A DNA stretch of 63,581 bases, filler included, from Sluysia triapertura (taxonomy: Eukaryota), in NCBI GenBank assembly GCA_046118255.1. It is 5 parts of 5 records of this genome, joined end to end, with 100 filler letters (N's around TTAATTAATTAA, not from the genome) between each part and the next. Parts side by side here need not be neighbours in the genome. Positions count along the whole stretch, not along the records: positions 27,932 to 40,323 come from JBJNIA010113421.1; 4 more parts are not named here. One strand, written 5' to 3'. The position numbers and the translations under genes are program-made. Position 1 is the first letter of the stretch. Every line of letters starts with the position of its first letter. Below, in pieces: positions 27,932-40,323 of the stretch. Under the pieces are notes generated by a model, which saw only the letters and a program-made list of their open reading frames with translations, had not been told where the DNA came from and did not search any database.

Positions 27932-27954
27932 CACAAATTTTAAATTACTTTAAA

Positions 27955-28717
27955 CCTGGATTATTCAATCCAACGACCGATATTACATGTGAAGGTGAAG
28001 TCGAAGGTAAGCTAAATCGATGTCGCATACACAATTTCTTACGAGACACCCAACTGATTATCGATGCCGATATGAAGGAGGATAAGGACATCGACAACAT
28101 CAAGCCCTATTTTTTCGGATATTTCCATAACAAAATTCGAGTATCCTTAAATCCTTTTTCTGTTATCAGATCCCTACAGCTACCTTTTGATTGGTTGAGA
28201 GAAAATTCATTTGACTAATCATAACCTCATCTACTTCTAAACAGAAGATAGCTTCCTTCGGGCCAGACAAACTTTAAAGCTGTTATACCATTTTTGCCTT
28301 AAATTTGCATGTAGGCAGCTGACCTCTGAGTTAGTAGCACCCATAGACTTTATAAGGGAGAAGGGCGTAACTTTTATTCCCATTTGCAGTAACCCTCCTC
28401 CAGCACTCTTTTCTAAACCCTATACTTCTTCTTCTCCTATCACATCGACATCTATGTCTAAAATCTCTGTATCTTCAAATCTTGTGCCTGTACCAGAATC
28501 GTCAAATCCATAGTCCTTTACCAAACCACAGCATAAGAAACGACAATTAACTCCTCCGCCGGAATTGGATTTGTCCTTCAGCGATTCTCTACGGATGTTA
28601 AGTAAATCACTTCCCGGGACAGTCATTTCTCCTTGTTACTTATTCAAGGATGATGTTGACCCGTGGACTCCGACTGATATCTCATTAACTTATTTACATT
28701 ATTTACATGGAATCTGA
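27955..28717 (+). pseudogene. Decayed extra ORF in the 3' internal region of an LTR element
   Basis: GC-richer stretch readable as about 250 codons with one shift and a few stops (PGLFNPTTDITCEG...KKRQLTPPPELDLS...). Ends about 120 nt before a PPT. No pol motifs recognised. Confidence 0.5.
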
Positions 28718-28824
28718 TCGATATTTTCTTGACTTAGTTATATAACATCATTTGCGATCTACGTTGATTATGTTGATTTTACATATCATTTGCATTATTT
28801 ATGTCGATACTACATTTGATTGGT

Positions 28825-28854
28825 AGGACAAATCTTCCCTGAGGGGAAAATATT
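28825..28854 (+). promoter_or_regulatory. Polypurine tract / gypsy-type 3' internal end
   Basis: AGGACAAATCTTCCCT-GAGGGGAAAA-TATT followed by TGTTGG, resembling the GAGGAC...AGGGGGGAGTATTGT ends of Ty3/gypsy elements. Confidence 0.55.
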
Positions 28855-30712
28855 TGTTGGAGTTACGTAGTTACATATTTGTTTGATTCTTAATTTGTTT
28901 TATAAATATTTTTATTTTATTTATATGCTTATATTTATTATATAAAATAATTAATTTGGAAAAAATAATTTAGTAAAAAATATTTGTATGAAATATATTT
29001 AAAATTTAGTAAAATAATTCTGATTTAAAATATTAAATTTTAAATAATTTTAATTTTGTTTATCTAAATCATTTCATTATTTATGAGAGAAAAATTAAAT
29101 GTGGCTGCTTACTGTGGATTTTATATAAATACAGGTAAAATCTTACATTAAGCAACCAGAGAAAATAAAGTGATAATCTTACAAGAAAATCTATTCCATA
29201 AAGTAGTAAGTTTGTTTGCTTATAAGTTTTGGTTTTCTATTTTGACTTAAATTTTCTTTTATTGTTACGCTAGACCTTAATGAGGCTAGTTTAAGTTGTA
29301 AGTTTAAAATAATTCCAGTATTATAAATTCTTCCAAATACTAACATCAAATATAATTTTTATTATACTTTTTGTTCTGTACCATCTATTAAGTTTTTTTG
29401 TTATATATAGTAAATTTTGCTAGACCTTAAGAAGGGTAGACTAACGTTTAAATTTACTAAATTATTCTAAATTCTAAACTATTTCCAAAACTAGACCATA
29501 ATCAGCTAGTTCAACCAATTAAAAGTTTAAATTAGAATAAGCTGTTGAATATAGAGAATGCATTTCATAATTTAACGAAGAAACTTGTTAAGAGAGATTA
29601 ACTTATTTATTCAATTCAATATTTATTCTAATATCAAAATCCTAATGTGACGTCATCTTCATGGATTTAAGCCGTACTTATTAAGCGAACTGACCTTTAG
29701 ATATTTTGCAAGATAGTTTCTCAGTAATGTGAGAAGGTACCATTCTAAATAAAAGACCACCACATGTCAAAGATCAATAATTATATTTTAATCAATTTCT
29801 AAAAATAATTTATTGATTATTACATATATTTCTAAAAATAATTTTTATGGTAATATTGTTATTATTGTTTTTATTATTATTATAGATTATTTTTGGTATT
29901 ATTATTATTGTAATAAGTTAATATTGTAATAAATTAAAATTTTATTCTTTATAAATTTAAATTCTTTATAAATTAATAAAAGTGAATTAAAATTCTTTAT
30001 TCTTTTCTCATTATTTATTCATAAGGTCACTAGACCTTTAATATAAATACAAGTTTAAAATGCAAAAATCTCAATAATTCAAACTGTTTAAACATTTTTT
30101 CATGAATTGATCATTATTCTCGTGGAACTACTTCATCACTATTGGATCTTTGCTTAAGGATTTTCTTTATCGCACTGTTACTCGTTAGTTTAATTTTTTT
30201 AAGTATCGTCTTTTTTAATTTAAGATCGTACTATTTTACTTAAAATCAATAATTAAAGTTGAAAATTAAAATTAAACTTCATATTAACGATTATACAATA
30301 ATCTTTAAACTGTATAATTTTACAAGTTCATTTATTATTGTTTTTAATATATTCATAATTTATTACATTTCTACTCGTTATAAAGTAAGGCCATCGGTTT
30401 TACTCGGTTGTAAAATCCACGACAAATCTTAGTTAAATTATAAAAGATTGTTAAGGTTACCGTTTTTCCAACACGGTAGTAAAATATTACTTAACATATA
30501 ATCTTTAATTTAGAGGAAAAAAAATATCAATTTCATACTTGTTAAATGATTTTTTTGAAGGACTAGCAAGAAAATACACTTTTATTGTTCCTCCGCATAA
30601 GTTCTTCTAAATTACTGCTTACAACTTATCCCTTAAGTGATTAATACTAAGATTGTAATGAATTCATAGCATAAACAAAACAAACAATTTCAGCAAAAAA
30701 CACTAGCATAAT
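28855..30712 (+). mobile_element. Putative long LTR between PPT and PBS
   Basis: Starts TG after the PPT and ends just before the PBS. Non-coding. Contains three CTAGACC..GGCTAG palindromes and the family hairpin at 30619-30666. Could be two abutting LTR pieces. Confidence 0.45.
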
Positions 30713-30716
30713 AAAC

Positions 30717-30734
30717 TGGTGCCCAGAGTGAGGA
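30717..30734 (+). promoter_or_regulatory. Primer-binding site, elongator tRNA-Met-like
   Basis: TGGTGCCCAGAGTGAGGA, 16/18 to TGGTGCCCCGTGTGAGGA (complement of the recalled animal elongator Met 3' end). About 175 nt upstream of the gag ATG. Confidence 0.7.
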
Positions 30735-30908
30735 AAACCAGTATTTAGAAGAAAATAAGATAAATTTCATAAGTATAAGTATAAATTGCTATAAATCCTA
30801 AATTCATTACTATACCCAAAATTATTAAGACTATAAGTAATACTTAAGTAAAAAATAGATAAACAAAGTGTACTATACGACGATTACCGAGCAAAACTAA
30901 GAAACTAT

Positions 30909-31430
30909 ATGGCATTACCTAATGATTTTATTGAATGTATGGTTCAGTTAGCCAGAGATATGCATCCAATAATGGCATTACCTGCAACTTTTTATTTAAA
31001 TATAAAAGCATAGCCGAAGTAAATGGCTGGAATGAAACCGAATAAGTAAAAAGAATCAAAAATTATTTAACTGAAGTAGCGATCGAGACATACAAGGAAA
31101 TAAACAATACTGATATACAGTCTTGGAATGCATTTGTTAACGCCTTTCCTGAAGAGGCAGCACTTGACGACATGGGGAAATACTATACTAAAATGTTAAA
31201 CTCAAGAATACAAAATATTAATAAAGAATCTGTATATGAATACGCTTGTGCTCTTAAAAGCCTTGTAGCAAAAGCAAAAGTCTCTGAAGATAACAAAGAA
31301 GCAACATTAATAGATAAATTACAAACTGGCTTACGACCAGAATTAATGACATATGCTATCTTAATAGAAGGAAAACCATTTAAAGAAATAATTAAGAAAT
31401 TAAGAATTATAAAGCGATCTTATATTTATG
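30909..31430 (+). pseudogene. gag: Ty3/gypsy-type Gag capsid region (one shift, one stop)
   Basis: YKSIAEVNGWNETE*VKRIKNYL..A...Y, SWNAFVNAF, MHR-like RIQNINKESVYEYACALKSL, and LIDKLQTGLRPEL. Confidence 0.85.
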
Positions 31431-33490
31431 ATAATGATAATATTAACTATGTAAGTGATGATGAATACATAAATAAAGGAGATAAAAGTCATAAATTAAG
31501 AAGAAACACAAATAATTATGATCACAATAATTACGACAGATATAACAGATCGAGATAGTAATTACGATAGCCTAGGTAGAGACGATTCAAATAGTAGAAG
31601 TAATACAAAAAAATTATAGAGGCAATTCAAATAATTATGGGGTAATACGAATTATAATACGAATAATGATAGAAGTAAAGGGTTCAAAAAACAATAAAAT
31701 AAGCAACAAAGACCAGCACCAATTCTAATATTAACAGTTATAAAAATAAAAGTAAACGCCCAATGAGATATGAAAATAATAACAATACACAAACTAACAT
31801 AGATGGAGAAATAAATTGTGATAAGAATGGAAATTACGCAAGAAATAATTTTACTAAGATAAGGGGCTCACAAAGATACCAAAGTCCTAATAGGAAAGTA
31901 AGATTTAACGATAATGATAAGGGACAAATTAATTATAATTATAAAAATAAGAAAAATTACAATTTTAGAGATGGAATGAATGAATACGAAGAAGAATACC
32001 AATATGAAGAAAGACCTAAAAGAAACATCCAGAACAAGCAACCATGAAGAAGAAAAATTAGTAGTGATGAAGAGGATGAAAAGTATTTAAAATTAATATC
32101 TGATGACGAAAAGAATGCAATGCTACGAGAATTCTATATTACTGGATTGGATTGCGATAAAAATAGATTTAGAAATAAACAAGAGGAAATTTTCATGAGT
32201 TATATGTATGATAGATATTTAGAATTTCCAAAAGATAAACAACGAAGGGAACAACGAGAAAAAGAAGAAAATAAACTAACAATTCAACCAATTCAAGTTA
32301 TAATTCGAGAAATATTAGATCGACCTATGGAAGAAGGAATAGAGCAAATAAAAGAAATAAAGGAAAATTACCAAGAAGGATAAAAGAAAAAGAATTCAAG
32401 AAATAATTGATAATTGGGAAGGTAAAACAAAAGAAATTAAATTAGTTAAAAAAGTTAGTAAAGGAAATTGAATCAAATACGGAATCCAGTAATTAGGTGA
32501 ATTAGGTGAAGAAAACAAAAGCAACGATGAAAATTGTAATGAATAATCTAACTTTAGTAATGACCAAGAAGTGGAGACAGATATTGAAAATATTAATTAC
32601 AAGGAAGTAGATGATGAAGAAATGCAAGCGGAAGAAATAGATACAGATATGAAAGAGGAATCATATTTTAGCGCTAATGAAAATGAAAAAAAGGAACCTA
32701 TAATAGTATTGGCTATTAGTATCGGCTACACCTGAAATGAAAATTAAATAAATTGATCAAAAAAGTTGAAGATTTTTTATTGGATATGGCAAATGGTATA
32801 ACAAATGCTAAAAAATTAAATGAAAATTTAAATGAATTATTGAATTCGGAATTAAGTATACAAAATGGGTACGATATTAAATTGATATTAGTATTTTAAG
32901 TAAGGAAGATTGTTTATACAAGAATAAGGCAAGAAGATTATTAAGAAAATAGGCCAAAAAGTAAGAGAAAATAACCCCAAAGACTTGATGAAAATAAGTA
33001 TAAATATTAAGAACGCTTTAAATATTACAATGGAACTCCCTATAACTTCAACTATAGAAGATATTATAGAATTGCTCAAGTCAAATGATTCAACAATACA
33101 TGATATTATTTTATATTTTTATGATAGAAAATTACTACCTAATGATTACATAAATGATTACGGTTATCCATCAATGAATGGAAACATCAATGACTTCCGC
33201 AGTTATAATGACCTTTATATGACTTAGCAAAATTAGATAAACTTATAAATGATAATGATGATGACGTCGATTTAGACAGAACCACAAGATTACTATTAAA
33301 GGAATTATTTGGAAATAATTATAATGAAAACAAATCTAATAATAAAGATTATACGGATAATAGTAAAATAATAGATATTACTAATGATAATGATAATAAT
33401 GATGATTTTGAAGAAAAACCTGACTATCTAGTAAATTTAAATAAAAACCCGCATATGGAAACTGAAGATAAAGAAACCAATATACTTTTC
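31431..33490 (+). pseudogene. Gag extension: N/R-rich, then acidic, then helical, then ubiquitin-like domain (32988-33170), then SIM-like tail (copy 2)
   Basis: Continuous same-strand coding-like fragments (31763-32047, 32120-32383, 32985-33227 and others). No CCHC knuckle or DTG/DSG protease seen. Truncated at about 33490. Confidence 0.75.
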
Positions 33491-33494
33491 TGTT

Positions 33495-33926
33495 AATCGA
33501 AAATCATGTACGATCATATTACTTAATATCCGTTTACTATGAAAGAGTAAACTTAATCTTACAAAATATCTGAAGGTTATGTCTACTTAATAAATCCACT
33601 TAATTTAAATCAATGTGGAAGACGTCTTATTAGTATTTTAAATACGACAGTTTTTGGTTGCCACTTAATCGTGCAGTCAAGATGTATTTTGTGTGTAGTA
33701 ACGCAACTTAGGCAGAGTCAATCAACAAATTGAACTAGCCTTTATGGTCTAGTTTATGATCAAAGATTAAGCTAGCCTTTAAGGTCTAAAGTGCAAATTA
33801 GGTTTAATTTTAATGGATTTTAAAGAATTCCAAATTGAATTAGCCTTTTAAGGACTAGCAAATAGTAACATATTCTAATCGTAAATAATAATGCGTTTAA
33901 GTCGTAAGAATGTATTATCCACAACA
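33495..33926 (-). mobile_element. Inverted diverged copy of the 29265-29780 LTR-like sequence
   Basis: The reverse complement aligns to 29640-29780 (GACGTC, TTATTAAG, ACCTT.AGATATTTTG.AAGAT) and carries the same three CTAG palindromes. Confidence 0.75.
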
Positions 33927-33965
33927 CAAAAATTATAACTCAACTAAGATAATTACATATAGTGA

Positions 33966-34700
33966 GCACAATCTCTGAAGAACAAACCAGCCATATACAT
34001 TACACATTTGGAAACTTCTGATACTGTCCGCTGTACCACCTGCTACATCATACAGAAATTCAACCCTTATGATGGATGCAGCCTCCGAAAACACCAAGGT
34101 AAGTTGCGCAATCGTCAATCTGGTCAACCAGTCATAATAAAAAGTACGTGCTCCCTTATATTCAATAACCACTCTGAGCTAGCTCGACACCTACTCACCC
34201 ATACAACCCCAAACAATCTCCAATATCAAGTGACTGCAGTTGATCTTGACTCACCAGTTGTGTCATAATGTCCTATTTCAGCGCCTACATTGCTGACTCT
34301 GACTCAGTTGTTCTTGATTGCCTGACAGCAATATATACGGTGATGTTCAGGCCTTCCTGAACAACTTCCCTATACCAAAACTTTCAAGATGGACTTACCT
34401 ATAAGAGAATTTTCAACTTAGAAAGGCACTGGATAATGATAATTTTCAGCAAGAATGCCAGTTCCTACGTCATTGTGGACCCTCTAAATTCCCAACCTGG
34501 CCACTTGCACATTACATCAGCAATGTCGTATCTACCCATAAATCACTACCAATATACCCAGTACCACAAGATTACAGGTATCGACCAATACAATATCCTA
34601 CACAAATTGGACCAACTGATTGCGGACCCTATATATGTGATGCTGCATTACAATACAAACGAAATCCTGATGTGGTGTCACGCTTCAATATACAACATAC
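33966..34700 (+). pseudogene. C2H2 zinc finger(s) plus Ulp1/SENP-like C48 cysteine protease, frameshifted; probable 5' part of a NeSL-like non-LTR element
   Basis: CTTC..LRKH and TCSLIFNNHSELARHLLTH, then LDSPVIMSYF, IFNLERHWIMIIFSKNASSYVIVDPL (His 34427, Asp 34478) and, in another frame, YPTQIGPTDCGPYIC (Gln 34603, Cys 34621). Confidence 0.8.
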
Positions 34701-35121
34701 ATCTCATCCACTATCACCATCAACCACATAAACCTCATCACATAAACAAAAATCACATCGAAGTAAAATACATTTACAACATCTGCAGTATTTACAACAT
34801 TTACAACACTTTTATCTCCCGCAAATCACAAACGCGTAATAAAATCTTTTTTAGTAATACCTCCTTATATGTAACGCCTGTTGTCATCTCATCATCACTA
34901 CGGCACTACCTTTTCATTGTATTTCTTGTCTTCAAAGTTATGAAGTAATCATATTTTTATGGTGTCTTAACATGTTATTATTATTGCTTACTACTGTTAA
35001 ATGGTTTTTCGATTTATTAAATAACATCACAAATATTTATTAGAAACACCTTTTTGCATCTTTAACCAAAACTATGTAGTTCCCAGTAGTTGCCTGACTC
35101 AGCATTTGAAGAATTAAATAG

Positions 35122-35460
35122 GCATCACCAACCACCACAACTACTCAAACAGTATTTATAAATAGCGATTACTACGATCAAGAACAAATGAATGAACAGA
35201 ATCAAGAATTGGAAGTAAATGATAAAGACGAAATGCATAACGCGACATCTGATGGTGACACATCAGGTTGTAAACTTACTGCTGAAGAGTTACTGAATGG
35301 AAAAAGAGAAGACGAAGAACATGAAGAAATTGAGAATGTTGGAATTGATTGTTCGAGTTCTCAAATAAATTCAGACGAAAACGCTGTCATATGTGAAAAC
35401 AACCAAGAAACAAATATCGATTCTGAAGAAGAACGGGAATTTGTTAAAGAGTTGATTTAA
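35122..35460 (+). other. Acidic coding-like segment, possibly an orphan terminal exon
   Basis: Open from an AG at 35120-35121 through the 35188-35460 ORF. E/D/N-rich. No upstream exons identified. Confidence 0.35.
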
Positions 35461-37288
35461 ATATTCGAATAATATTAATGTACAACTTATTTTCGTGGAA
35501 AATTTTGCTTAACATATATAATTTCAAGTGTTTATTTTATAAAAATTAAATATACAAAGTTTAAATCATTATATATATGTACATGTTTAGATTAATGTAT
35601 TTGAAAACTGTACATAATTTATATTAAATTTGTGTTTACATAATTTTTGTAATCACTGTTTACAAAAATGATGATGTATCATTCTAATTCTTTATTTTAA
35701 GAACTATACTGTGGTGATCCCATATCCCTCTAAGATTAAAACAAAATTATACAATTTTATAAATGAAATATGCCTTGGTTATATTAAATTTAAACTTTGG
35801 TAGCTGCTTAGACAAACATATCTTAAGCCGTTTCATATTCCTTTATTTCGACTTTTTGAAGTCATTTTTAAATCAGGATTCTTCAGCAAATTTTCAATGT
35901 CTGGTTATGCTAAAATATTGATGACAAATATTAGAATAAAATAAAAAAATAATTAATAAATAAAATTAAAATAATTAATTTAAAGCAAAAAATGTGTTAT
36001 TTTATTTAAATTTTTATATTTAGACTTTGAGTCGCATAGTTTATTTCGGTTTCGTCGTAATTAAACGATATGAATTATTGAACATATTAAAAATAAGATT
36101 TTAATTGAATAACATCTTAAATAAATCAAATGATATTGATATCTTTTTACACTATATCAAAATTAAATGTTGAGCATTCAAAACAATCATTCATTGATGC
36201 ACTTAATTTGATTTAAATAGATAATTTTATTTTAATTTTAGATAAGTTTAAATAAATAAATTTATTATTGTTAAACTAAGATTTAAGCTATTCATAATTT
36301 TATAATTAAAGCAAAATCTAATAATAAAATATTTTTTGGAGTATCTAGTGTTATGTAATTTGATTATCTTAAAGAGGAATTCAAATATTATATTTTTTTA
36401 TTTGATTTTATTTTTCATATACATTTAGGTTGTGCACCAATATTATTGATAGATCCGTCGAAATTGTAGAACAAAATCCAGATGAGCATAGTGCTTAATG
36501 GTTTTAAGTGTTAGAATTTTAAAGTTGTATAACTAATTGTAAAAATAGCAATAATTAAAAATTGTATATTTAATTAAAGATTGTATATTTAATAATTAAA
36601 AATTGTTATAAAAGTCCCTAATATTAAGGACTGTTTAGAATTTTTGTGGTTAGTTATTAGAGATTAGTAACTATTCATAATCGGTAATATATCATTGATT
36701 TCGGCTCACCGTTCCTTTATCGTACTTATATTATCTATTATACCAATCAAGCAACTGTAGTACATATTTTCCGATCTTTCTGATTGATCTCATCTCTTAG
36801 TTTGTTGATGCATCTTATGTTAGTTTGTATTTATTTGTGTGTTAGTATTCGTTTTTTCGATGATGCCCTTCGATCAGTTGTCATTTTTGCTTGCTAATTA
36901 AGTGTGACAATTCCCCATTCATATTTTTTACATCCTGCTTTTTATTTTTTGTGTTAACTCGTTTCAAGGCATTTTTGGCGTTTATTAAGATTTTTTAACG
37001 ATGTTTTTGTTCTGGTTTATTTTCTAAACTTTCAATAGTATTGAGTAAGTTTCAATTGATTTTTATATTTATTTAACTTAACTTATATTTTTATATACAT
37101 TAACATATGTATATTTTCTTAACATTACAACGTTGTTAATTTGGTTAATGTTGTTAAATATTCTGATTATTAAATATTTTTATTAAATGCAAATTCGTTT
37201 TTTAAAATAATGATTTAAGAATCTTTAACATATATTGTTTTTAATTTAGATACATCCTGCAATAAACATCTTTAGTAATGAATGACAG

Positions 37289-37343
<55 letters not shown>

Positions 37344-39739
37344 TATTATTATTATTATACATTTTATTAATATTGTTTTATTTACATCTAATTGATTTTT
37401 GATTGATGTCTGTTAATGACTGGATATTATTATTATTAGTTTTCTTTTGAATTTATGTTAGGGTCAGTTGATTTATTATTTGTAACATTAATAAGCACAT
37501 CGATTCGATGTATTTTATTGGTTCTTTTAATTAATGCTTTTTATCATGTTTTATTAATTTCAATCCAATCAAATTCATTTTCAGTATTAATTGTTAAATT
37601 TTTAAGCTTTAACTTTATGTTAAAAGTATAATTGTTTTATATTTTTTAAATTTATTAAACTTGGCACATTATCTATCGTAAAATATGTATCATTTTCATG
37701 TTTTGTTTTTTGAAATCCAAAATTCAAAGCAGGAAAAATAACAAAATTTTTTTCTTATTTTATTCTTTATAATTTCCTATTATTATATTTATCTGTTTAA
37801 TTCTTTCTTTCTAAATCATAATAAATTTGATTTCAATTTCGTTTATTAATGTTTTGAATTTGGCTTATGTTAAAGAAAAATTTTGATTGCCAACTGATCA
37901 TTTTGGGTTAATGTGTTCATTAAATAACTATATGATAGAAATTTTATTAATAAATTGTATATTTCATTTTATATTCGTGAATAATATATTGCATATTTTT
38001 AATGTTTTTATAGAGTTAATTAGTATTTTCATAGATTTTTGAATGTAATTTTAATTTTAAAATTTAAAGTCTACAAATGATAAATAAACCGGATGAAATT
38101 TCCAAATTTAAATATGTAATTAGTATTTGATTTTATAAATTTGATTATTTCTCTTTTGTGGGGATCAGCTCTAATATTATAGAGCTTTTAATTATCATTA
38201 AAATATTTTTAATCATGAAATATAATATGAATTTTTACGCTAATGGTATTCATATTCATTTAATTTCACAATTAAAGAATTACTTCTAAACGTTATGCTC
38301 TTGTATTTAATCTAAACATTTAAATATAAGGTTTATTTTAACAAAATAAGCGTAGGAATTATAGAAAATAGTAAACTAATACTCTACAAAACAATGAATT
38401 AAAATCATTGATTTCATTGGGGTTTTTAAGAGTAATGTTATATTCTAAAAATTTAGTTGGGTAATATTAAATTATCAGCTTTTATATTTTTATAACGCAA
38501 TTAAATGTCTGAAGCTCGATATATTCTAAACCTTGGGAAAAAGTATATAACAATGTAAACATCAGTTATAATACTCAATTCCGAGCGTGACAACACATAT
38601 AAATGTTAGTACCTGAACAACCATAAATAATTAAGTCCATACTAACTACGAATTAATTTATCTTTTTGCCTTAGTCAGATTACTAACGAAACATAAGACT
38701 CAATCAATATTTATCACTATTCTTACAGCAGAAGAAATGATCAAGTATTGCAATAATTTTTTGTATTATATGATAGCAAAAATGTGGTTATTTAATAATA
38801 ATTGCTAGAAAATCTGGAATTCATCATAATTATTGCACGTGTCGGCAACGCATACCTACTTCAAAGAATCGGTTTTATGTTGACAGAATTTAACAGTCAA
38901 ATTTGATCATTAATTTCCCACTTATTGTCATCTAGCAGGTATCTATAGATAATGATTTTTTTGAATAACTGTTGGGGATTATATTTAACGTTAGTTATTC
39001 TAAGTATCTTAAATGCTTGAATTTCTTATCCTAATTATTTAACAAAATGACAAAGTATAGCGCTAAATTTCTTTTTATTTAAAATTTAAACTTAGAAATC
39101 GTATATAAATAAAGAACTAAATAATAATAACAATGATAAAATGAAAATGATAAAACTAAGTAATGAGAAATTAAATGTGTAATTCAATAATGATGAAATA
39201 ACAAAAAGAATATGGGGATCTCCATTTCCCTTTAACCTAAAATATAAACATAAAGCTAGTGAGGGAATTTGCCTATTAGTTACCTACTAGATAAAAATTA
39301 AGTAATATGTTTTCAATTCAATGTGAAAGAAAGTAATTAGATTGAATGCCTCCCAGAATTAGTCTAAACGTACTAAAATAATTTAAGTGCGATTTTTTTC
39401 AAAAGTTAAATTTAAATCTTCAATAAAACTAAGTGGGGCAGAATGGCCCCCAACAATTAAATCATCATTTAACAATAAAATAGATTGGGTAGAGAGGCCG
39501 AAAAAATAGTTTTTATTTATTTTTAAATAAGAATAAAAATAATCGAATAAATTATTACTACATCATGGATCTTCTATGTCATTTAGCGTGGACTATGGTA
39601 TTAATAAAATCTGCAAAATAATACTTGGAGATTTGTGTCAATTTGTTATTGCCTATTAATAATTGTGTTGTAAAAATTTTAATACTTTTGTTGGGATATA
39701 GTCCTAAGGTGTCATTTGGTATAGTTGACTCTAATAATC

Positions 39740-39810
39740 TAAAAATTGTTAGAGGGTAGAGCATCTAACTGCCCAGCGAGAGGTCCCAGATTCGATCCCT
39801 GGTCATTCCA
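39740..39810 (+). pseudogene. tRNA-Gly(GCC)-derived pseudogene or SINE head
   Basis: GGTAGA D-loop, CTGCCCA anticodon loop, GCGAGAGGTC, T-arm CCAGATTCGATCCCTGG and 3' TCATTCCA. Acceptor and anticodon stems are broken. Confidence 0.65.
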
Positions 39811-40323
39811 TTTCTAACACTTTCTCATTATTCATTCACTCTTGAATTCTACAATCAAACATTCTCTTACACAAATCATTTGAACCTCTTAGAAGGATTA
39901 TACCGACAATAGCAGCTAGGAAAATTACATAGTACAGCCTGTCAGACATCTAAGTACAGAACATAAAATTTGTTCAAGGATTTGTTGATATTGCCCAGTT
40001 AGTGTATGGATAATAGATTAAAAGGTAATAGAATTTAAAATATATAAGAAAAATTGATATAAAATAGCTGGAATATGATAATATAAACTTAATTAAATGT
40101 TCGGTTTTATGTCTATACGAACAATTATAAAAAGAAATTTATAAAGTTGGGTCCGCCTACGTTAAACGCTTTATCTTAACTGGAAGGACATTTACGTAGG
40201 ATTTAAAAATACTCAAAGCTAAAGGTCAAGAAACTCTTTTATCTATGTAATATTAGTAGTTATTTTACTCAACAAATATGTTCCTAATTCTTTATTTTCT
40301 TAACGCTTTTACTTTAATTAATT

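What the first reader, a model, noticed from the sequence alone, without database searches (positions are those of the whole stretch)
30717..33490. Gypsy-type Gag extended into a ubiquitin-like domain
Seen: a PBS, a Gag capsid, about 1.5 kb of low-complexity same-strand coding, then MKISINIKNALNITMELPITSTIEDIIELLKSNDSTIHDIILYFYDRKLLPNDYINDYGY. By hand this aligns to ubiquitin 1-61 with one gap and about 14 identities, and is hydrophobic at every core position (I3, V5, I13, L15, V17, I23, V26, I30, L43, F45, L50, L56, Y59). There is no di-Gly and no obvious last beta strand. No zinc knuckle or protease lies between capsid and UBL. Knowledge: canonical Ty3/gypsy Gag is capsid plus nucleocapsid, and I do not know of a Gag-linked UBL in this group. 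Inference: the ancestral element made a Gag-UBL polyprotein that could engage the proteasome, p97 or DUBs. The fusion is reconstructed across several stops and frameshifts.
Basis: partly seen in the sequence, partly recalled or inferred. Interest (0 to 1): 0.9.

Follow-up and report, generated by a model that had tools for sequence, protein, structure and literature searches.

The report
Decayed Gag element with possible ubiquitin-like domain
A broken, polymerase-less retrotransposon-like copy has a real Gag capsid domain and, 1.4 kb further along the same decayed reading frame chain, a 59-residue stretch that may be a ubiquitin/SUMO-like domain, but that domain is only borderline and its fusion to Gag cannot be shown from this one copy.

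Summary
The sequence features are there. A 17-nt tRNA-primer-binding-like site lies at 30717-30733. A Gag capsid domain at 31046-31555 passes Pfam's own threshold (PF03732). A decayed same-strand coding chain runs 30852-33493, with at least 15 disabling lesions against about 46 in composition-matched simulations. The quoted peptide starts at Met 32988. No zinc knuckle, protease, RT or integrase motif was found in any frame of the 12.4 kb piece, so 'gypsy-type' rests on Gag alone.

The ubiquitin-like call is borderline.
- For: Pfam Rad60-SLD (SUMO-like) scores 17.6-19.2 bits (E 1e-3 to 3e-3), below the 23.8-bit threshold. All 14 ubiquitin core positions are hydrophobic (2 of 3000 shuffles match this).
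- Against: PDB shows no ubiquitin-like match at E<=10. There were no relatives among 1.84 billion proteins. Two AlphaFold models (pLDDT 56-57) give only the beta-beta-alpha start, not a beta-grasp. No last strand or di-Gly was found.

Gag and the ubiquitin-like stretch are separated by at least 12 lesions, so a single polyprotein is inferred, not shown. No other copy could be retrieved.

Most likely this is a dead, non-autonomous Gag-bearing retroelement (TR-GAG-like) whose non-pol coding part may contain a non-conjugatable SUMO-like domain. Modest interest.

The parts
30717..30733 (+). Primer-binding-site-like 17-mer TGGTGCCCAGAGTGAGG. Its complement ends in CCA, like a tRNA 3' end.
   Evidence: Read directly from the sequence. 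It lies about 135 nt upstream of the first Gag open segment. From memory only, 15 of 17 bases match the 3' end of elongator tRNA-Met. No tRNA set of the host was available to test it.
30852..31010 (+). N-terminal part of gag: an open segment of 53 codons in a different frame from the capsid piece.
   Evidence: It joins the capsid piece through one frameshift near 30933 and one stop at 31043 in the minimum-lesion path. It has no Pfam hit of its own.
31046..31555 (+). Gag capsid domain followed by a basic, Asn/Tyr-rich tail. It ends in a double stop, TAG TAA, at 31556-31561.
   Evidence: Pfam PF03732 Retrotrans_gag at E=1.8e-5, 25.3 bits against a gathering score of 24.1. Residues 7-98 match profile positions 6-97 of 97.
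31556..32927 (+). Decayed same-strand coding sequence rich in Asn, Lys, Glu and Asp, with no recognisable domain.
   Evidence: Open segments 31703-32044, 32048-32380, 32547-32732 and 32741-32896. Block-wise lesion counts are 3, 4 and 3 against simulated means of 7.9, 7.8 and 6.7, with P<=0.02. There are no Pfam hits and no homologues of 32048-32380.
32988..33164 (+). Ubiquitin/SUMO-like stretch of 59 residues starting at a Met. No di-Gly and no clear last strand.
   Evidence: Pfam PF11976 Rad60-SLD at 17.6-19.2 bits, E 1.1e-3 to 3.3e-3, below the gathering score of 23.8, covering profile positions 1-61 of 72. The best of 37 decoy segments gives E=0.017. Core pattern 14/14. AF2 pLDDT 56-57 with beta-beta-alpha only. 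Foldseek gives no significant hit. No PDB or library homologue.
33212..33493 (+). Acidic Asp/Asn-rich tail, an open segment of 94 codons. It holds a SUMO-interaction-motif-like IIDIT plus acidic run at 33368-33400. The chain ends at TAA 33494-33496.
   Evidence: It has 0 lesions against a simulated mean of 5.6. A motif of this type appears in 2% of shuffled chains, but it was chosen after the fact.
33464..33476 (+). Purine run GAAGATAAAGAAA, a weak polypurine-tract candidate just before the end of the coding chain.
   Evidence: Read from the sequence. Not tested further.
33497..34015 (+). Non-coding repeat after the coding chain, a candidate 3' terminal repeat. It carries three palindromic CTAGnCCTTwAAGGnCTAG-like motifs.
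   Evidence: Non-coding by the lesion test. It resembles 29240-29800 in inverted orientation (z=8.9). It resembles 30210-30718 in direct orientation only weakly (z=2.4). G+C rises to about 40% after roughly 34000.
29240..29800 (-). Inverted copy of the same repeat, about 0.9 kb upstream of the PBS-like site.
   Evidence: Local alignment score 122 against a null of 49.7 +/- 8.1. A 91-nt block is 72.5% identical, with motif blocks in the same order.

Best explanation
This is one dead copy of a retrotransposon-type unit that carries gag but no pol. A tRNA-primer-binding-like site is followed by a Gag capsid domain, and then by about 1.9 kb of further former coding sequence on the same strand. That sequence is basic and Asn-rich, then Lys/Glu-rich, then a 59-residue ubiquitin/SUMO-like stretch, then an acidic tail. 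A non-coding repeat follows.

Shown:
- the Gag domain;
- the continuity of coding character from 30852 to 33493;
- the absence of zinc knuckle, protease, RT and integrase motifs.

Inferred:
- The unit was a non-autonomous, Gag-bearing LTR-retroelement derivative of the TR-GAG kind, moved in trans by an autonomous partner's enzymes.
- The part after gag is not degenerate pol. It is a different protein-coding segment, possibly taken from a host gene.
- That segment probably (about even odds) contains an integral, non-conjugatable SUMO-like beta-grasp domain. Without a di-Gly it could not be attached to targets. It would act as a built-in docking surface, for Ubc9 or SIM-bearing partners if SUMO-like, or for ubiquitin receptors if ubiquitin-like.
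- Whether it was translated as one Gag-UBL polypeptide or as a separate downstream product is open.
For: - Gag: PF03732 scores above its gathering threshold.
- Coding chain: 805 codons in long open runs against a simulated mean of 120. The minimum is 15 lesions against a simulated mean of 46.5 and minimum of 37. The standard genetic code fits best.
- Every block from 30852 to 33493 looks coding-like on the + strand only. The flanks look non-coding.
- No CCHC, D[ST]G or YxDD motif occurs in any frame. No Pfam pol domain was found in the 39 open segments scanned.
- UBL: the Rad60-SLD hit is stable at 17.6-19.2 bits and starts exactly at the Met. It is about 5-fold better than the best of 37 decoy segments from the same piece.
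- The ubiquitin core positions are 14/14 hydrophobic, with P about 7e-4 against shuffles of the whole chain.
- AF2 places beta1-beta2-alpha1 where ubiquitin has them, and the only short structural matches with low rmsd (1.7-3.6 A) are to ubiquitin and ISG15. A few longer local matches to talin FERM heads had rmsd 6-8 A.
- A SIM-like motif lies 50 residues downstream.
- Gag-only non-autonomous LTR elements (TR-GAG) are a described class (PMC13570524).
Against: - The UBL hit is below Pfam's threshold. The profile score, the core pattern and the AF2 start all read the same hydrophobic pattern, so they are not independent.
- No solved ubiquitin-like protein matches at E<=10.
- There are no relatives among 1.84 billion representative proteins.
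- Both AF2 models are of low confidence and helical in the second half, not a beta-grasp.
- The last strand is missing.
- No convincing direct LTR pair exists. The direct pair gives z=2.4, and its identity of roughly 58-60% by eye is too low for a copy with only about 15 lesions. The clear partner of the downstream repeat is inverted.
- The PBS could not be tested against host tRNAs.
- Only one copy was seen, so neither repetitiveness nor the ancestral ORF structure is established.
Confidence: 0.45

Rival explanations
1. The Gag-bearing dead element is real, but the ubiquitin-like stretch is a chance pattern. An Ile/Leu/Asn/Lys-rich peptide from an AT-rich decayed ORF happens to place hydrophobic residues at ubiquitin core positions.
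For: - The Pfam score is below threshold.
- The PDB search gives no ubiquitin-like match at E<=10.
- No homologues were found at all.
- No beta-grasp model or significant Foldseek hit was obtained.
- There is no beta5 and no di-Gly.
- 44% of the 61 residues are hydrophobic, and another natural open segment of the piece reaches 13/14 on the core test.
Against: - The profile hit is 5-fold better than the best of 37 decoys and is stable to trimming.
- A 14/14 core match occurs in 2 of 3000 shuffles of the chain and 0 of 3000 shuffles of the piece.
- The match starts exactly at Met, aligned to profile position 1.
- The LxFxxxxL...DYxY stretch, the most typical ubiquitin-like signature, is present.
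Confidence: 0.35
2. The ubiquitin-like domain is real but was never part of Gag. Either it heads a separate downstream ORF (Met 32988 to 33493, UBL plus acidic tail), or the whole post-gag segment is a transduced host-gene fragment, for example from a SUMO or Rad60/Esc2/NIP45-type gene, that replaced pol.
For: - The capsid frame ends in a double stop at 31556-31561.
- At least 12 lesions separate capsid and UBL.
- The UBL match begins at a Met aligned to profile position 1, as in proteins with an N-terminal UBL.
- The post-gag segment has no pol motif and no retroelement domain.
Against: - No non-coding gap exists between gag and the UBL-like stretch.
- The 20 codons before the Met are open in the same frame.
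- No host parent gene could be found.
Confidence: 0.15
3. This is not a transposon copy. It is a pseudogenised host gene with a domesticated Gag-like domain and a C-terminal ubiquitin-like domain.
For: - Only one copy was seen.
- No convincing direct LTR pair was found.
- No pol motif was found.
Against: - A PBS-like 17-mer sits at the expected distance upstream of gag.
- A repeat present twice in the piece abuts the end of the coding chain.
- The locus is heavily decayed and sits in AT-rich non-coding DNA.
Confidence: 0.05

Closest known systems
TR-GAG / gag-only non-autonomous LTR retrotransposons
   Same: PBS-like site, a Gag ORF, no protease, RT or integrase, and a small size of about 3-4 kb. 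Such elements are presumed to depend on an autonomous partner (PMC13570524).
   Different: TR-GAGs are described in plants and carry gag alone. Here gag is followed by about 1.9 kb of further non-pol coding sequence. The terminal repeats are not a clear direct pair.
Ty3/gypsy (Metaviridae) Gag
   Same: The capsid domain belongs to Pfam Retrotrans_gag, PF03732.
   Different: There is no CCHC nucleocapsid knuckle and no protease-RT-RNaseH-integrase. Lineage placement by RT is therefore impossible.
SUMO / Rad60-Esc2-NIP45 SUMO-like domains (Pfam PF11976) and integral UBL domains such as those of Ddi1 and Rad23
   Same: A sub-threshold profile match over positions 1-61 of 72 and a hydrophobic core pattern. 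There is no C-terminal di-Gly, as in integral non-conjugatable domains. From knowledge, Ddi1 already joins a UBL to a retroelement-type protease domain.
   Different: The score is below threshold, the last strand was not found, and no beta-grasp model was obtained. The partner domain here would be a capsid, not a protease.
Engineered retroviral Gag-ubiquitin fusions
   Same: Ubiquitin fused to Gag can replace late-domain function in budding (PMC2958808, title and abstract listing only). A Gag-linked ubiquitin-like module therefore has a known functional precedent.
   Different: Those are laboratory constructs of enveloped retroviruses. A natural Gag-UBL in an LTR retrotransposon is not described in the papers searched.

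Membership tests
LTR retrotransposon, Ty3/gypsy | Gag capsid domain of the Retrotrans_gag type | tested here: met
   PF03732 at E=1.8e-5, 25.3 bits against a gathering score of 24.1.
LTR retrotransposon, Ty3/gypsy | pol with protease, RT, RNase H and integrase in that order | tested here: not met
   No D[ST]G, YxDD or HHCC motif in any frame. No pol family among the 39 open segments scanned in Pfam.
LTR retrotransposon, Ty3/gypsy | Two direct long terminal repeats flanking the PBS and PPT | tested here: inconclusive
   The direct pair 30210-30718 against 33485-34017 gives only z=2.4. The inverted pair 29240-29800(-) against 33480-34020(+) gives z=8.9.
LTR retrotransposon, Ty3/gypsy | PBS complementary to a host tRNA 3' end | not testable with these tools
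   A 17-mer beginning with TGG lies at 30717. No host tRNA set was available, and no tRNA gene was called in the piece. The resemblance to tRNA-Met is from memory.
LTR retrotransposon, Ty3/gypsy | CCHC zinc knuckle in the nucleocapsid | tested here: not met
   No CX2CX4HX4C on the + strand.
Ubiquitin-like beta-grasp domain (Pfam Rad60-SLD PF11976 / ubiquitin clan) | Profile score at or above the family's gathering threshold | tested here: not met
   17.6-19.2 bits against 23.8, E 1.1e-3 to 3.3e-3. PF00240 (ubiquitin) was not reported.
Ubiquitin-like beta-grasp domain (Pfam Rad60-SLD PF11976 / ubiquitin clan) | Beta-grasp fold (beta2-beta1-beta5-beta3-beta4 sheet packed on a helix) | tested here: inconclusive
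   Single-sequence AF2 gives pLDDT 56-57, with beta1-beta2-alpha1 and then helices. Foldseek's best E is 3.1-3.5. Only local matches of 33-39 residues to ubiquitin and ISG15 appear.
Ubiquitin-like beta-grasp domain (Pfam Rad60-SLD PF11976 / ubiquitin clan) | Hydrophobic residues at the conserved core positions | tested here: met
   14/14 with one 1-residue gap, reached by 2 of 3000 chain shuffles and 0 of 3000 piece shuffles. The beta5 positions are not matched.
Ubiquitin-like beta-grasp domain (Pfam Rad60-SLD PF11976 / ubiquitin clan) | C-terminal di-Gly (needed only for conjugatable modifiers) | tested here: not met
   The frame ends ...NDLYMT before the stop at 33225.
TR-GAG non-autonomous LTR element | Terminal repeats, PBS and PPT with a gag ORF and no enzymatic domains | tested here: inconclusive
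   Gag is present, no enzymes are present, and there is a PBS-like site. The terminal repeats are unclear. Extra non-gag coding sequence is present.
Ulp1/SENP C48 peptidase (neighbouring block 34361-34728, not part of the element) | His-Asp-Gln-Cys catalytic residues with family spacing, plus a profile match | tested here: inconclusive
   By eye the spacing is H-17-D-about 42-Q-6-C across one frameshift. There is no Pfam hit. SENP2 matches only at E=1.1 over the Cys region.

The most novel reading that the evidence does not exclude
A retroelement lineage replaced the nucleocapsid and pol part of its Gag polyprotein with a charged linker carrying an integral SUMO-like domain followed by a SUMO-interaction motif. 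Its capsid protein would then be hard-wired into the host SUMO/ubiquitin system, for example through self-association via SLD-SIM contacts, or by recruiting Ubc9 or ubiquitin receptors to particles of a helper element.
Probability: 0.15. Interest if true: 0.7.

Novelty: new variant of a known kind. Interest (0 to 1): 0.33.

Why it matters
If real, this would be a natural case of a retrotransposon capsid protein joined to a ubiquitin-family domain. That has so far been known only from engineered retroviral Gag-ubiquitin fusions and, in mirror image, from host Ddi1 (a UBL joined to a retroelement-type protease). It would make testable how a non-autonomous element uses host modifier pathways to compete for a helper's machinery. 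As it stands, the evidence is one decayed copy in an unidentified AT-rich eukaryote with a sub-threshold domain call. The finding is a lead, not a result.

Tried and rejected
Searches for other copies or homologues, all empty:
- Word-indexed protein searches with the capsid piece, the middle piece 32048-32380 and the C48-like piece.
- Exhaustive phmmer of the UBL piece against 1.84 billion representatives.
- Back-translated scans of metagenome, viral and prokaryotic genome contigs with the capsid and UBL pieces.
- Exact look-ups of nine window ORFs.
- tBLASTn of all pieces against the piece itself.
- As a result, the organism could not be identified.

Other tests:
- Rfam and ARAGORN found no RNA gene.
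- An alternative genetic code was rejected. The standard code gives the lowest lesion ratio, and the in-frame stops are a mix of TAA, TAG and TGA.
- A PDB hit of the capsid piece to designer PPR proteins (E 1e-9) was rejected as a repeat-summing artefact. Per-repeat E is 2-7 and Pfam reports no PPR family.
- A direct LTR pair was looked for and found only weakly.
- A possible second, upstream SUMO-like remnant ('SIQNGYDIKLILVF', 32741-32896) was considered by eye and dropped, because Pfam shows nothing there.
Full report
**Setting.** The piece (27932-40323) is AT-rich eukaryotic DNA, with G+C from 16% to 41% in 500-base windows. A lesion test counts the minimum number of stops and frameshifts needed to read through a block, and compares it with Markov simulations of the same block. 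It finds coding-like sequence only on the + strand. The coding-like blocks are 27932-28714, 30852-33493, 34361-34750 and, weakly, 35122-35460. All other blocks behave as non-coding, including 28715-30851 and 33497-33965.

**What is at the coordinates.**
- TGGTGCCCAGAGTGAGG sits at 30717-30733. Its complement ends in CCA like a tRNA 3' end. From memory it matches the 3' end of elongator tRNA-Met at 15 of 17 bases. No host tRNA was available to test this, and no tRNA gene was called in the piece.
- From 30852 a chain of open segments runs to the TAA at 33494-33496. Its frames change in the order 0, 2, 2, 2, 0, 2, 0, 2.
- The chain holds 805 codons in open runs of 45 or more. Simulations average 120 and never exceed 498 in 2000 runs.
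- Reading the chain through needs at least 15 lesions: 8 frameshifts and 7 stops (3 TAA, 1 TAG, 3 TGA). Simulations need 46.5 on average and never fewer than 37. The reverse strand needs 24.
- No alternative genetic code fits better.

This is therefore a real but dead coding region of about 880 codons.

**Gag.** The piece 31046-31555 hits Pfam Retrotrans_gag (PF03732) at E=1.8e-5. Its 25.3 bits lie above the gathering score of 24.1, and the match covers almost the whole profile. A PDB hit to designer PPR proteins is a repeat-summing artefact. The capsid domain is followed by a basic, Asn/Tyr-rich tail and a double stop at 31556-31561.

**No pol.** No CCHC knuckle, D[ST]G, YxDD or HHCC pattern occurs in any of the six frames of the whole piece. 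None of the 39 open segments scanned hits a protease, RT, RNase H or integrase family. However, 'gypsy-type' now rests on the Gag family alone, and no RT is available for a phylogeny.

**The stretch between Gag and the UBL-like piece.** Blocks 31556-32047, 32048-32546 and 32547-32927 need 3, 4 and 3 lesions. Their simulated means are 7.9, 7.8 and 6.7, with P<=0.02 for each. There is no non-coding gap. The translated chain is rich in Asn, Lys, Ile, Glu and Asp. It has no Pfam family and no homologue. Joining capsid to UBL still takes at least 12 lesions.

**The ubiquitin-like stretch.** The quoted peptide starts at Met 32988, inside the 99-codon open segment 32928-33224.

Evidence for:
- Pfam Rad60-SLD (PF11976, the SUMO and SUMO-like family) is the top hit. 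It scores 17.6 bits (E=0.0033) on the 99-residue piece and 18.2-19.2 bits (E 1.1e-3 to 2.3e-3) on trimmed versions.
- The aligned region is always residues Met1-59 against profile positions 1-61 of 72.
- Thirty-seven other open segments of the same piece, from both strands, give a best E of 0.017. The E-values therefore look calibrated, and this hit is about 5-fold better than any decoy.
- Taking ubiquitin's core positions (3, 5, 13, 15, 17, 23, 26, 30, 43, 45, 50, 56, 59, 61) as a fixed template with one small gap allowed, the piece scores 14/14 with Met = position 1.
- That score is reached by 2 of 3000 shuffles of the whole 755-residue chain and by none of 3000 shuffles of the piece. The next best natural open segment scores 13.

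Evidence against:
- The Pfam score is below the 23.8-bit threshold.
- phmmer against all PDB sequences finds no ubiquitin-like protein even at E<=10. The 13-14 identities to ubiquitin are therefore not above chance as a pairwise match.
- phmmer against 1.84 billion representative proteins finds nothing at E<=0.001.
- Two single-sequence AlphaFold models (99 and 79 residues) have pLDDT 56-57. They show beta1-beta2-alpha1 followed by helices, not a beta-grasp.
- Foldseek against PDB gives no hit better than E=3.1. Only local matches of 33-39 residues to ubiquitin, ISG15 and similar domains appear, at 1.7-3.6 A.
- The last strand is not recognisable, and there is no di-Gly.
- The positive lines all read the same hydrophobic pattern, so they are not independent.

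I put the chance of a true beta-grasp domain at about one half.

**Tail.** The 94-codon open segment 33212-33493 is acidic. It contains IIDIT followed by NDNDNNDDFEE (33368-33400), which looks like a SUMO-interaction motif. A motif of this form appears in 2% of shuffled chains, but it was picked after the fact.

**Boundaries.**
- The coding chain ends where a non-coding repeat begins.
- That repeat (about 33497-34015) has a clear partner in inverted orientation at 29240-29800. The local score is 122 against 49.7 +/- 8.1, including a 91-nt block at 72.5% identity.
- It resembles the stretch just upstream of the PBS-like site (30210-30718) only weakly, at z=2.4.
- For a copy with about 15 lesions in 2.6 kb, I would expect cognate LTRs to be far more alike. 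A standard LTR pair is therefore not established.
- Two elements lying head to head, a rearranged copy, or an element with inverted terminal repeats all remain possible.
- Both repeats carry three palindromic CTAGnCCTTwAAGGnCTAG-like motifs.

**Other copies.** None could be reached in protein collections, metagenome, viral or prokaryotic contigs, by exact look-up, or within the piece itself.

**Interpretation.**
- The best-supported reading is a dead, non-autonomous, Gag-bearing retroelement derivative. It is comparable to the TR-GAG class of gag-only LTR elements (PMC13570524).
- Its post-gag coding part is not pol. It may contain an integral, non-conjugatable SUMO-like domain.
- Such a unit would need a helper element for protease, RT and integrase.
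- A built-in SUMO- or ubiquitin-like surface on, or next to, the capsid protein could dock host factors. Engineered Gag-ubiquitin fusions show that a ubiquitin module on Gag can be functional (PMC2958808).
- No natural Gag-UBL retrotransposon turned up in the literature searches.

The rivals are:
- a chance pattern;
- a real UBL in a separate downstream ORF or in a transduced host fragment, favoured by the double stop after capsid and by the Met at profile position 1;
- a pseudogenised host gene.

**Verdict.** The finding would be a new variant of a known kind if the domain and the fusion hold. On present evidence it is a modest lead.

Noticed in passing
window 34361-34728 (+): A decayed Ulp1/SENP-type (C48, SUMO protease) domain, identified by eye. 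His is in RHWIMII (34427) and Asp in VIVDPLNS (34478). After a frameshift come Gln (34603) and Cys (34621) in PTQIGPTDCGPYIC. The spacing H-17-D-about 42-Q-6-C matches Ulp1 as recalled from memory. There is no Pfam hit, and SENP2 matches only at E=1.1. The block looks coding-like and is richer in G+C, at 37-41%. It lies about 1.1 kb downstream of a SUMO-like candidate, on the same strand, but is separated from it by non-coding repeat DNA. The adjacency may be chance.
   Followed up: partly
window 33966-34265 (+): Remnants of a C2H2 zinc finger (...HSELARHLLTH...) just upstream of the C48-like block. Pfam zf-C2H2 gives only E=0.057.
   Followed up: partly
window 33368-33400 (+): A SUMO-interaction-motif-like IIDIT followed by an acidic run, about 50 residues after the SUMO-like stretch. 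It is the only match to this pattern in the chain, and 2% of shuffles contain one. It was noticed after the fact.
   Followed up: partly
window 29269, 29419, 29491, 30029, 30556, 33731, 33771, 33838: An imperfect 18-20 nt palindrome, CTAGnCCTTwAAGGnCTAG, recurs eight times. Three copies lie in each of the two inverted repeat copies. Its function is unknown.
   Followed up: partly
window 27932-28714 (+): A coding-like chain runs off the left edge of the piece. It needs 3 lesions against a simulated mean of 7.4 and has G+C of 34-38%. A possible short intron lies at about 28141-28170. No Pfam family was found. It may be the 3' end of a host gene or of another element.
   Followed up: partly
window 39740-39813 (+): A sequence resembling the 3' half of a tRNA (...GGTCCCAGATTCGATCCCTGG...CCA). 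Neither ARAGORN nor Rfam calls it.
   Followed up: partly
window 37290-37360: An (ATT)n microsatellite of about 70 bases.
   Followed up: no
window 35188-35457 (+): A 90-codon acidic ORF with an ATG start. It is weakly coding-like (P=0.04) and has no Pfam family.
   Followed up: partly
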